DNA of 63,895 nucleotides, the filler included, from Octopus bimaculoides (taxonomy: Eukaryota): assembly GCF_001194135.2 (NCBI RefSeq). It is 8 parts of 8 records of this genome, joined end to end, with 100 filler letters (N's around TTAATTAATTAA, not from the genome) between each part and the next. Parts side by side here need not be neighbours in the genome. Positions count along the whole stretch, not along the records: positions 8,165 to 17,901 come from NW_026430003.1; 7 more parts are not named here. The stretch is one strand, 5' to 3'. Of the stretch, positions 12,469-12,771 are shown in pieces. Made by a program: the position numbers and the translations under genes. Positions within the stretch are counted from its first letter, which is position 1, and each line of letters begins with the position of its first letter. The notes under the pieces were generated by a model that did not search any database, was not told where the DNA came from, and saw only the letters and a program-made list of their open reading frames with translations.

Positions 12469-12771
12469 TCATCTCAAAACACAAGCCACTGTTCCATTAT
12501 AGAGTTTTGGCTCATAATTGCAATAGTTTCCCATACAAGCATTTCCAGGGCATTTAACAAACATAACAATCTCTTTGAATACTGGTTTACAGCGTTCGTT
12601 GTCTTTGCAGACGGCTCTTTCGAACACCCGCGGGAAGCGGTTATCGTCGATATGCCGAACCCAATCCGATTGGCATTCGGCGAAAGAGTTGGCCCTGTCC
12701 TCACCGATTGGTTCCAGGCCAGAATCAGTTGTTCTTCTGTTGAAGAATTTTAATACTGCTTCTGAGAACTT
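12469..12771 (-). CDS. IL17: Interleukin-17-like cytokine, main or terminal coding exon (100 aa + stop)
   Basis: KFSEAVLKFFNRRTTDSGLEPIGEDRANSFAECQSDWVRHIDDNRFPRVFERAVCKDNERCKPVFKEIVMFVKCPGNACMGNYCNYEPKLYNGTVACVLR* matches the IL-17 pattern C-x2-3-W...D-x-NR[FY]P...A-x-C...C-x-P[VI]-x3-I...Y...V-[GA]-C. It is preceded by a strong acceptor (ttttcttttcttttctttcgatttgcag, AG at 12773-12772, phase 0). The frame is also open upstream to ~12867 with a hydrophobic stretch (MVLVVMFGIVFVANS). Confidence 0.8.
   Translation of the reverse strand, partial: KFSEAVLKFFNRRTTDSGLEPIGEDRANSFAECQSDWVRHIDDNRFPRVFERAVCKDNERCKPVFKEIVMFVKCPGNACMGNYCNYEPKLYNGTVACVLR

What the first reader, a model, noticed from the sequence alone, without database searches (positions are those of the whole stretch)
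12469..12771. Divergent IL-17-like protein that has lost both cysteines of one knot disulfide and gained a 3-Cys loop
Seen: seven Cys in the contexts CQSDW, RAVC, CKPV, CPGNACMGNYC and VACVLR*. Established: IL-17s pair the EAxC Cys and a second Cys ~5 residues later with a terminal CxC, many invertebrate IL-17s add the CxxW / CxP pair, and IL-17-like genes are expanded in octopus. Here the loop after RAVC shrinks to KDNER with no Cys, and the terminal CxC is C-V-L. Inference: both partners of one disulfide were lost together, which suggests selection rather than decay and would open the knot ring. The odd Cys count could allow a covalent dimer, making this a structurally distinct IL-17 subtype.
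Basis: partly seen in the sequence, partly recalled or inferred. Interest (0 to 1): 0.75.

Follow-up and report, generated by a model that had tools for sequence, protein, structure and literature searches.

The report
Last exon of two-domain octopus IL-17-like gene
The stretch is a real, selectively maintained coding exon, but it encodes only the second of two IL-17-like cytokine domains of an octopus gene whose small family has a rebuilt disulfide pattern, and the "extra" seventh cysteine is a one-base change peculiar to this copy.

Summary
Confirmed: a minus-strand exon, 12771..12469, runs from a splice acceptor to TGA. It encodes 100 aa with seven Cys in the stated contexts.

It is not a whole protein. 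Its relatives are 218-260 aa proteins with a signal-like N-terminus and two homologous IL-17-like domains. They include O. vulgaris CAI9744326.1, O. bimaculoides LOC106882237, Argonauta hians and three unidentified sources. The window holds the domain-2 exon, at the same phase-0 intron position. The locus is collinear with the O. vulgaris gene. The domain-1 exon's expected place is the N gap 13441-13507.

IL-17 identity:
- Pfam on the exon alone fails (14 bits; cut-off 24), but full-length relatives pass (27-35 bits).
- The AF2 domain model (pLDDT 87) matches IL-17A/IL-25 (prob 1.00, TM 0.62-0.79).

Cysteines:
- All 13 domains examined share six Cys with a single terminal Cys instead of CxC.
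- "CKP" aligns to the Ser of IL-17A "NSVP".
- The loop is a conserved C-x4-C. The third Cys is a window-only CGC->TGC change, so the odd count is not a family feature.

Selection: omega is 0.29 against O. bimaculoides (core 0.05), but this copy changes amino acids much faster than its relatives.

A single-chain pseudo-dimer is inferred, not shown.

The parts
12469..12771 (-). Terminal coding exon (100 codons plus TGA) encoding the second IL-17-like domain and the inter-domain linker
   Evidence: It is 73.5-75% identical to the domain-2 exon of O. vulgaris and O. bimaculoides and 56% identical to that of Argonauta. The phase-0 intron position is the same as in L001, L004, L005 and L006.
12772..13159 (-). 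3' part of the intron between the domain-1 and domain-2 exons. It holds the AG acceptor 12773-12772, a polypyrimidine tract, a (TTG)n microsatellite and a copy of a short interspersed/satellite repeat (about 12900-13100).
   Evidence: It aligns collinearly with O. bimaculoides L005 1289-1666 (82% identity without gaps) and with O. vulgaris L006 10969-11125 and 11532-11644. The hydrophobic 'MVLVVMFG...' extension of the ORF is a translation of this intron.
12550..12552 (-). TGC codon of the seventh, non-conserved Cys (exon residue 74)
   Evidence: It is CGC (Arg) in O. bimaculoides and O. vulgaris, R in Argonauta, and V in the other three relatives. The change is a single C->T at a CpG.
12667..12669 (-). 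TCG codon (Ser35) replacing the Trp of the CPW/SPW-type motif
   Evidence: It is TGG (Trp) in all other domain-2 sequences. hhalign places it opposite the Trp of IL-17A 'SPW'. This probably contributes to the exon's lower Pfam score: 14 bits against 20.4 bits for O. vulgaris domain 2.
11814..12468 (-). 3' flank or UTR, homologous to the O. vulgaris 3' flank
   Evidence: Window 11814-12870 aligns to L006 12634-11532 at 75.6% over 1122 columns. The flank alone is 84% identical without gaps. No AATAAA or ATTAAA occurs before the N gap at 11813.
13441..13507 (.). Assembly gap (67 N) at the place where the signal-peptide and domain-1 exon is expected
   Evidence: Collinear anchors with O. vulgaris bracket the gap: 13586-13516 <-> L006 9173-9241, and 13159-13002 <-> L006 10969-11125. 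The O. vulgaris domain-1 exon (L006 10001-10426) lies between them. No domain-1 similarity exists anywhere in the assembled piece.
13516..15243 (-). 5' flank of the gene, collinear with the O. vulgaris 5' flank. Anchors: 13516-13586, 14274-14395, 15097-15127 and 15184-15243. It is interrupted by the N gap 14435-15070.
   Evidence: blastn anchors to L006 9173-9241, 7947-8073, 7430-7460 and 7329-7387 lie in the same order and orientation.

Best explanation
The finding is the last coding exon of an octopod gene for a secreted protein with two tandem IL-17-like domains. It is an orthologue or close paralogue of O. bimaculoides LOC106882237 and O. vulgaris CAI9744326.1.

The exon encodes the inter-domain linker and the whole of domain 2. 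Domain 2 is predicted as a four-stranded, two-hairpin IL-17 fold.

The family replaces the canonical IL-17 cysteine set with a fixed six-Cys frame:
- a Cys at the 'CPW' position;
- the 'EAxC' Cys;
- a Cys at the start of strand 3, which is the 'CxP' position of invertebrate IL-17s and a Ser in vertebrates;
- a C-x4-C pair in the strand 3-4 loop;
- a single terminal Cys in place of CxC.

The most likely pairing, inferred by homology, is C1-C3, C2-C6 and C4-C5. That means one of the two ring-forming disulfides is gone and a local loop disulfide has been added.

Because IL-17 cytokines act as dimers, I infer that the two domains of one chain pack as an intramolecular pseudo-heterodimer that engages IL-17-receptor-like proteins. 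I put this step at roughly 40% and it is not shown.

This particular copy keeps its strand 1-3 core under strong purifying selection. It has evolved unusually fast in the linker, the strand 3-4 loop and strand 4. In that loop it acquired a seventh Cys by one CpG transition, and near the core it lost the motif Trp.

Its domain-1 exon is not in the assembled sequence. Its expected position is an assembly gap.
For: Homologues and architecture:
- Searches found the homologues. All are two-domain proteins with a hydrophobic N-terminus.
- Exon structure and the phase-0 intron are conserved.
- Domain 1 and domain 2 are homologous with all six Cys aligned (hhalign prob 95%, E=3.6e-8).

IL-17 identity:
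- Pfam IL17 scores 30.7, 35.4 and 27.3 bits on full-length relatives (cut-off 24). Argonauta domain 2 alone scores 25.7 bits over profile positions 3-77 of 81.
- The PDB profile search returns IL-17A, IL-17F and IL-25 as 25 of its 27 matches at E up to 10. The other two, 1wol (E=0.08) and 8ucj (E=2.9), are unrelated proteins.
- hhalign to IL-17A gives E=3.6e-6.
- The AF2 model of the window's domain has pLDDT 87.4 with strands 9-15, 23-29, 35-47 and 60-73. Foldseek gives prob 1.00 and TMq 0.62-0.79 to IL-17A/IL-25.

Cys mapping.

Expression of the family: L002 and L003 are spliced contigs from sequencing runs.

Selection:
- Window vs O. bimaculoides: dS 0.52, dN 0.151, omega 0.29. Core codons 33-73 give omega 0.054.
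- Window vs O. vulgaris: omega 0.18, core 0.018.
- Only 2 of about 31 nonsynonymous changes fall in the core (P=8e-6), although synonymous changes there are as frequent as elsewhere.

Locus collinearity with the O. vulgaris gene on both sides of the missing exon.
Against: - The exon alone is below the Pfam IL17 cut-off (14 vs 24 bits).
- No domain-1 exon or signal peptide is present in the assembled 5.1 kb upstream. The gap is nominally only 67 N, whereas about 1.2-1.7 kb of O. vulgaris sequence corresponds to that interval. A real deletion is therefore possible.
- Substitutions unique to the window are spread evenly over codon positions (14/14/15), against 0/0/21 in the two Octopus orthologues. 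Amino-acid change is asymmetric, 11 vs 2 (P=0.01-0.02). This shows relaxed constraint outside the core.
- There is no expression evidence for this copy. No identical or near-identical protein appeared in the protein collections.
- The full-length AF2 model was poor (pLDDT 44, pTM 0.35). Neither the domain-domain packing nor the disulfide pairing is shown.
Confidence: 0.68

Rival explanations
1. The exon is a relic. The promoter-proximal region and the domain-1 exon were deleted in this locus (or this is a partial duplicate). The intact exon is then a young, non-expressed pseudogene fragment.
For: - No domain-1 exon is present in the assembled sequence, although the flanks are collinear.
- The interval that should hold about 1.7 kb contains only 67 N plus a palindrome and microsatellites.
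- Window-specific substitutions are uniform over codon positions (14/14/15).
- Amino-acid evolution is accelerated (11 vs 2), including loss of the motif Trp.
- The copy is not annotated or predicted in the protein collections.
Against: - The reading frame, the acceptor, all six framework Cys and the stop position are intact.
- The core has 2 nonsynonymous against 7-14 synonymous changes (omega 0.02-0.05). The deficit of core replacements has P=8e-6. Neutral drift would not produce this unless inactivation was very recent.
- The contig ends in a TA microsatellite on one side of the gap and in a 98% palindrome abutting the N run on the other. Both are typical of an assembly break rather than a deletion.
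Confidence: 0.24
2. It is a stand-alone, single-domain IL-17-like protein. Translation would start at an in-frame ATG in the hydrophobic stretch just upstream (MVLVVMFGIVFVANSF...), which would serve as a signal peptide.
For: The ORF extends upstream to 12867 with in-frame ATGs and a hydrophobic stretch.
Against: - That stretch is a (TTG)n microsatellite plus the polypyrimidine tract and AG acceptor of an intron. This intron is alignable with the O. bimaculoides and O. vulgaris intron.
- The exon boundary coincides with the conserved phase-0 junction in four other loci.
- No such product is on record.
Confidence: 0.04
3. It is not an IL-17 relative but belongs to another cystine-knot family, such as PTTH/Trunk-like or PDGF-like proteins.
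For: Foldseek also lists PTTH (5aoq, rank 37, TMq 0.67) and PDGF-B (rank 43) among its matches. The canonical IL-17 four-Cys signature is not met.
Against: - Pfam matched IL17 in every relative. It was the sole match for most. The few others (CDC45, Spem1, DUF3641, and MAML1_3_TAD1 on the window exon) were all weak, sub-threshold chance matches.
- The PDB sequence-profile search returns IL-17A/F/IL-25 but no PTTH, NGF or PDGF chain even at E<=10.
- The motif 'D(D/E)NRFPRVFERAVC' matches IL-17A 'EDPERYPSVIWEAKC'.
- The top 36 fold matches are IL-17A/IL-25.
Confidence: 0.04

Closest known systems
O. bimaculoides LOC106882237 (XP_014788327.2, partial) and O. vulgaris CAI9744326.1 / A0AA36C330 ('hypothetical predicted protein')
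   Same: The locus has the same architecture: collinear flanks, the same intron position and the same stop position. Amino-acid identity over the exon is 73.5-75%, with a 32-residue identical run. The six-Cys frame is the same.
   Different: The window copy has 25 amino-acid differences. Of the 13 that Argonauta can polarise, 11 are on the window lineage and 2 on the Octopus lineage; the other 12 are ambiguous. They include W35S and R74C, the seventh Cys. dN is 0.15, against 0.004 between the two Octopus orthologues at a similar dS. Whether it is an orthologue from another octopod or a paralogue cannot be told. Only one copy lies in the 64.7 kb O. vulgaris locus.
Vertebrate IL-17A/IL-17F/IL-25 (e.g. 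PDB 4HR9, 7UWN, 7UWK)
   Same: The predicted four-strand, two-hairpin fold matches (TMq up to 0.79). The 'D..R(Y/F)P..(I/F).(E/R)A.C' strand 1-2 motif matches. The Cys after 'EA.' is conserved. One loop Cys aligns with IL-17A Cys106.
   Different: - There is no C-x4-C after strand 2. The 17-residue strand 2-3 connection of IL-17A is 5-6 residues here.
- There is a single terminal Cys instead of CxC.
- Cys replaces Ser at both the 'SPW' and 'NSVP' positions.
- There is an extra C-x4-C in the strand 3-4 loop.
- There are two domains per chain instead of one.
Invertebrate 6-8-Cys IL-17s with the 'CPW' motif (molluscs, echinoderms; Saco et al. 2021, PMC8353272)
   Same: They keep the two 'extra' Cys that replace the chordate serines. 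They belong to the expanded molluscan and cephalopod IL-17 repertoire.
   Different: That paper describes invertebrate IL-17s as having the four-Cys motif plus two extra Cys, and a single IL-17 domain near the C-terminus. Here one ring disulfide is missing, a loop pair is added, and the domain is duplicated in tandem. I found no paper describing tandem IL-17 domains.
PTTH/Trunk cystine-knot hormones (PDB 5AOQ)
   Same: The general cystine-knot growth-factor fold is shared (Foldseek TMq 0.67).
   Different: There is no sequence-level match. PTTH retains a full three-disulfide knot with a terminal CxC; this last point is from my own knowledge and was not tested here.

Membership tests
IL-17 (Pfam PF06083) | Profile HMM score at or above the gathering cut-off (24 bits) | tested here: inconclusive
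   The window exon alone scores 14.0 bits, E=0.067, matching only profile positions 6-30. Full-length relatives score 30.7, 35.4 and 27.3 bits with two matched stretches. Single domains score 17-26 bits, and Argonauta domain 2 alone passes at 25.7. Membership therefore holds for the gene family, and for the window exon only by homology.
IL-17 (Pfam PF06083) | IL-17 / cystine-knot-type fold: two long beta-hairpins, four strands | tested here: met
   The AF2 model of window residues 27-100 of the exon, built with a 12-row alignment, has pLDDT 87.4 and strands 9-15, 23-29, 35-47 and 60-73. The Foldseek PDB top 36 hits are IL-17A/IL-25, with prob 1.00, TMq 0.62-0.79 and E about 1e-2.
IL-17 (Pfam PF06083) | Four conserved Cys forming the two ring disulfides (C-x4-C after strand 2, paired with a terminal C-x-C) | tested here: not met
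   Only one terminal Cys ('ACV') is present in all 13 domain sequences examined. The Cys that follows 'RAVC' aligns to the Ser of IL-17A 'NSVP', not to 'LGC'. Its spacing is variable (x5-6 in domain 2, x6-13 in domain 1). At most one of the two ring disulfides can form.
IL-17 (Pfam PF06083) | CPW/SPW motif before strand 1 | tested here: inconclusive
   The Cys is present. The Trp is present in all other domain-2 sequences (CQW/CRW) but is Ser in the window (TGG->TCG). Domain 1 of the family also has Ser or Thr there.
IL-17 (Pfam PF06083) | Secreted dimeric ligand of IL-17R/SEFIR-type receptors | not testable with these tools
   Relatives have hydrophobic N-termini, judged by inspecting the sequences. 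The window lacks that exon. No binding or dimer data exist, and the full-length AF2 model is uninformative.
Cephalopod tandem-IL-17-domain subfamily (defined here: P0001, P0002, P0003, P0004, P0011, P0012) | Six-Cys frame C...C-x5-13-C...C-x4-5-C...C with the invariant 'NRFPRVF.RAVC' motif in domain 2 | tested here: met
   All six are invariant in the window exon, and there is a 32-aa identical run with Octopus.
Cephalopod tandem-IL-17-domain subfamily (defined here: P0001, P0002, P0003, P0004, P0011, P0012) | Two-domain architecture: a signal plus domain-1 exon, a phase-0 intron, then a domain-2 exon | tested here: inconclusive
   The intron position and phase are met. The domain-1 exon is absent from the assembled sequence, and its collinear position is the N gap 13441-13507.

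The most novel reading that the evidence does not exclude
Cephalopods carry a conserved natural 'single-chain IL-17 dimer'. It would consist of two tandem IL-17 domains that arose by internal duplication. Each domain would have a rebuilt three-disulfide frame in which one ring disulfide of the knot is replaced by a loop disulfide. The two domains would fold onto each other as an obligate pseudo-heterodimer with two non-equivalent receptor faces. The window copy would be a fast-evolving member whose loop has gained a free thiol.
Probability: 0.35. Interest if true: 0.65.

Novelty: new variant of a known kind. Interest (0 to 1): 0.45.

Why it matters
IL-17 cytokines are defined by a four-Cys partial knot and by signalling as non-covalent or disulfide-linked dimers. 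This small, conserved cephalopod subfamily drops one ring disulfide, adds a loop disulfide and puts two such domains in one chain. It would show how far the fold tolerates rewiring. It would also be a natural example of dimer-to-tandem-repeat conversion in a cytokine, which protein engineers have to build by hand.

It also bears on the expanded IL-17 repertoire of octopus. Per-domain Pfam scores sit at or below the cut-off, so domain-based gene counts can miss or mis-split such genes.

For genome annotation, this exon should not be called as a stand-alone gene.

Tried and rejected
- Word-indexed protein search with the exon alone found nothing, even though O. vulgaris shares a 32-aa identical run. 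I discounted that negative. The exhaustive HMMER scan found the family.
- Single-sequence phmmer against the PDB gave only chance hits. A family profile was needed.
- P0005 (a 525-aa internally repeated, Cys-rich protein, E=2.6e-9 summed over 5 repeats) and P0006 (a bacterial-looking 'SLYNGTIAW' repeat protein) were judged spurious. Their matches are short and repeat-inflated.
- tblastn for a domain-1 exon or a paralogue in the piece found none.
- Exact-product look-ups for P0001 and for an ATG-started version of the window ORF found nothing on record.
- Full-length AF2 of P0001 with 6 rows gave pLDDT 44. It could not be used for inter-domain packing, and its Foldseek hits were IL-17 but carry little weight.
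- dN/dS against Argonauta and L002-L004 was unusable because synonymous sites are saturated (pS 0.78-0.95). It became possible only after fetching the O. bimaculoides and O. vulgaris DNA.
- An apparent collinear match of window 16163-16429 to the O. vulgaris intron was rejected. It is a multi-copy interspersed repeat with better matches elsewhere in L006.
- The sample accessions of L002-L004 could not be tied to a species.
- Literature searches for tandem or double IL-17 domains returned nothing. The octopus genome paper was not held.
- Model coordinates are not exposed, so Cys-Cys distances could not be measured.

Full report
**1. Observation**

On the minus strand, a polypyrimidine tract and an AG (12773-12772) are followed by an open frame from 12771 to the TGA at 12471-12469. 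The longer ORF listed mechanically (12867..12469) owes its hydrophobic N-terminal extension to a (TTG)n microsatellite and the polypyrimidine tract of an intron.

**2. What it belongs to**

- The exon alone gives only a sub-threshold Pfam IL17 match (14 bits, E=0.067, cut-off 24). It gave no hit in the word-indexed protein search.
- The exhaustive HMMER scan found four related clusters at E=4e-50 to 6e-17:
  - O. vulgaris CAI9744326.1 (242 aa) and its O. bimaculoides orthologue LOC106882237;
  - two near-identical Argonauta hians proteins (260 aa);
  - proteins from three unidentified sequencing or assembly samples.
- The full-length relatives have a hydrophobic N-terminus followed by two Cys-rich domains. 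P0004 is a mis-called gene covering only domain 2, but its locus (L004) also carries a domain-1 exon. The window exon corresponds to the inter-domain linker plus domain 2.
- Genomic loci show one exon for the signal and domain 1, then a phase-0 intron of 1.1-3 kb, then one exon for domain 2. This holds in Argonauta (L001), an ENA assembly (L004), O. bimaculoides (L005) and O. vulgaris (L006). The junction is exactly where the window's acceptor lies.
- Two contigs from sequencing runs (L002, L003) carry the two domains joined without the intron. They are therefore spliced transcripts, and the family is expressed.

**3. Is it IL-17?**

- Full-length relatives pass the Pfam IL17 cut-off (30.7, 35.4 and 27.3 bits, two stretches each).
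- Single domains score 17-26 bits. Argonauta domain 2 alone passes at 25.7 bits over profile positions 3-77 of 81.
- A profile of 12 domain sequences was searched against all PDB sequences. Of 27 matches at E up to 10, 25 are IL-17A, IL-17F or IL-25 (best E=1.3e-3); the other two (1wol, 8ucj) are weak and unrelated.
- hhalign to human IL-17A gives E=3.6e-6.
- AF2 on the window's own domain with that alignment gave pLDDT 87.4 and four strands at 9-15, 23-29, 35-47 and 60-73.
- The first 36 Foldseek matches to that model are IL-17A or IL-25 (prob 1.00, TMq 0.62-0.79). PTTH and PDGF rank lower.
- The fold and the family assignment are therefore sound for the gene family. The window exon belongs to it by clear homology.

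**4. The cysteines**

- Domains 1 and 2 are homologous to each other, with all six Cys in register (hhalign prob 95%, E=3.6e-8). The frame predates the internal duplication.
- HMMER and hhalign agree on these placements against IL-17A:
  - C1 opposite the Ser of 'SPW';
  - C2 on the 'EAKC' Cys;
  - the 'CKP' Cys opposite the Ser of 'NSVP' at the start of strand 3, with Pro on Pro;
  - the first Cys of the C-x4-C opposite IL-17A Cys106.
- The AF2 strand boundaries put the 'CKP' Cys as the first residue of strand 3.
- The spacing from C2 to that Cys varies from 5 to 13 residues across the family. That fits a loop rather than the fixed ring segment.
- All 13 domain sequences end with a single Cys instead of CxC. 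Whatever the exact mapping, only one of the two ring disulfides can form.
- The pairing C1-C3, C2-C6 and C4-C5 is my inference by homology.
Cys74 is Arg or Val everywhere else and arose by CGC->TGC at a CpG. The odd Cys count is therefore peculiar to this copy. It could even be a polymorphism or a base-call error.

**5. Selection**

| Comparison | dS | dN | omega |
|---|---|---|---|
| Window vs O. bimaculoides, whole exon | 0.52 | 0.151 | 0.29 |
| Window vs O. bimaculoides, core (codons 33-73) | 0.376 | 0.02 | 0.054 |
| Window vs O. bimaculoides, linker (codons 1-32) | 0.918 | 0.274 | 0.30 |
| Window vs O. bimaculoides, loop and strand 4 (codons 74-96) | 0.365 | 0.257 | 0.70 |
| Window vs O. 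vulgaris, whole exon | 0.854 | 0.154 | 0.18 |
| Window vs O. vulgaris, core | 1.166 | 0.02 | 0.018 |
| O. vulgaris vs O. bimaculoides | 0.65 | 0.004 | 0.007 |

- At a comparable synonymous distance, the window lineage has replaced amino acids about 35 times faster than the two Octopus orthologues have between themselves.
- Three-way site patterns show the same thing. There are 43 window-unique substitutions, spread 14/14/15 over codon positions. The two Octopus sequences have 21 unique substitutions between them, all at third positions (Fisher P=2e-7).
- Polarising with Argonauta assigns 11 replacements to the window lineage and 2 to the Octopus lineage (P about 0.01-0.02). The window's replacements include the motif Trp (W35S).
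- Yet only 2 of about 31 nonsynonymous changes fall in the core, which has its full share of synonymous changes (P=8e-6).
- This is the signature of a gene whose fold-critical or binding core remains under selection while its periphery is relaxed or diversifying. It is not that of a long-dead pseudogene.

**6. Locus context**

The window is collinear with the gapless O. vulgaris locus from about 2.7 kb upstream of the start codon to about 0.7 kb past the stop:

| Window | O. vulgaris (L006) |
|---|---|
| 15243-15184 | 7329-7387 |
| 15127-15097 | 7430-7460 |
| 14395-14274 | 7947-8073 |
| 13586-13516 | 9173-9241 |
| 13159-13002 | 10969-11125 |
| 12870-12772 | 11532-11644 |
| 12771-12469 (the exon) | 11645-11947 |
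| 12468-11814 | 11948-12634 |

- The O. vulgaris segment 9242-10968 contains the domain-1 exon (10001-10426). It corresponds in the window to a TA microsatellite, the 67-N gap 13441-13507, a 97-nt, 98%-complementary inverted repeat that abuts the N run, and simple sequence.
- No domain-1 similarity exists in the assembled piece. The upstream exon is either hidden in a mis-sized assembly gap or deleted. I favour the gap but cannot prove it.
- O. vulgaris has only one copy in the 64.7 kb examined. Whether the window is an orthologue from another octopod or a paralogue remains open.

**7. Mechanism**

- Shown: the IL-17-type fold, the conserved non-canonical six-Cys frame, the tandem architecture in relatives, and purifying selection.
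- Inferred:
  - secretion, from the N-terminal hydrophobic segments of relatives;
  - the disulfide pairing;
  - that the two domains pack as an intramolecular pseudo-dimer standing in for the IL-17 dimer. The linker is not a mere tether, since F, N, E and P positions in it are invariant;
  - signalling through IL-17R-like receptors.
- The full-length AF2 model was too poor to test the packing (pLDDT 44).

**8. Novelty**

- The proteins are in databases as uncharacterised or hypothetical, with faint IL17 hits.
- The general expansion of IL-17-like genes in octopus, and the 6-8-Cys invertebrate pattern, are published (PMC8353272).
- I found no description of tandem IL-17 domains or of this Cys frame.
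- I rate it a new variant of a known kind, of moderate interest.

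Noticed in passing
window 8304-9629; also 12900-13100 (intron) and 15852-15973: A satellite-like tandem array with units of 253, 150 and 133 bp. A single copy of the same element sits in the intron just upstream of the exon, at the homologous place in the O. bimaculoides intron. Long arrays of it occur in the O. vulgaris locus (L006 23131-24170 and 58011-58841).
   Followed up: partly
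window 9676-9773: An interstitial telomere-like repeat, (AACCCT)n / (CCCTAA)n, about 13-16 degenerate units long, right next to the satellite array.
   Followed up: no
window 13238-13440: An inverted repeat with 97-nt arms, 98% complementary and 9 nt apart, whose outer arm ends exactly at the N gap 13441. It is either a MITE-like element or a fold-back assembly artefact at a contig end.
   Followed up: partly
window 16056-16476: A copy of an interspersed repeat that occurs at least 12 times in the 64.7 kb O. vulgaris locus at 74-89% identity. It overlaps a (TA)57 microsatellite at 16114-16228.
   Followed up: no
window 9915-10042, 11362-11813, 13441-13507, 14435-15070: Three of the four internal N gaps are directly flanked by (TA)n or (AT)n microsatellites (TRF arrays at 9890-9914, 11814-11857 and 14398-14434). 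The fourth (13441-13507) has a short TA run on one side and the palindrome on the other. The assembly therefore breaks at simple repeats. From 16572 to the end of the piece, much of the sequence is GT, TATG, AAAG, AGAC and GA microsatellites, which generate long spurious ORFs (e.g. 16687-17352).
   Followed up: no
L006 (O. vulgaris OX597843.1) 11926 -> 54537: The annotated isoform CAI9744325.1 (287 aa) leaves the domain-2 exon just before the last Cys ('NEP|VACVLK'). It joins a Gly-rich exon 42.6 kb downstream, which would remove the sixth framework Cys. The same GTGGCT sequence exists in the window. This is possibly an annotation chimera.
   Followed up: no
L004 8655-8708: A short extra fragment resembling the middle of domain 1 ('QTCQEASKLVHILKRKGT') lies inside the intron of the ENA-assembly homologue. 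It looks like a partial exon duplication.
   Followed up: no
Argonauta hians contigs (P0002 and P0010): Two 260-aa copies differing by two residues lie on two different contigs (1.23 and 1.98 Mb). They are either a recent duplication or uncollapsed haplotypes.
   Followed up: no
P0013-P0015 (Logan contigs): Gene calls that read from the domain-1 exon straight into the intron ('...NMSR|VSGLYICY...'). These are genomic or unspliced contigs, and they confirm the GT donor directly after domain 1 in further samples.
   Followed up: no
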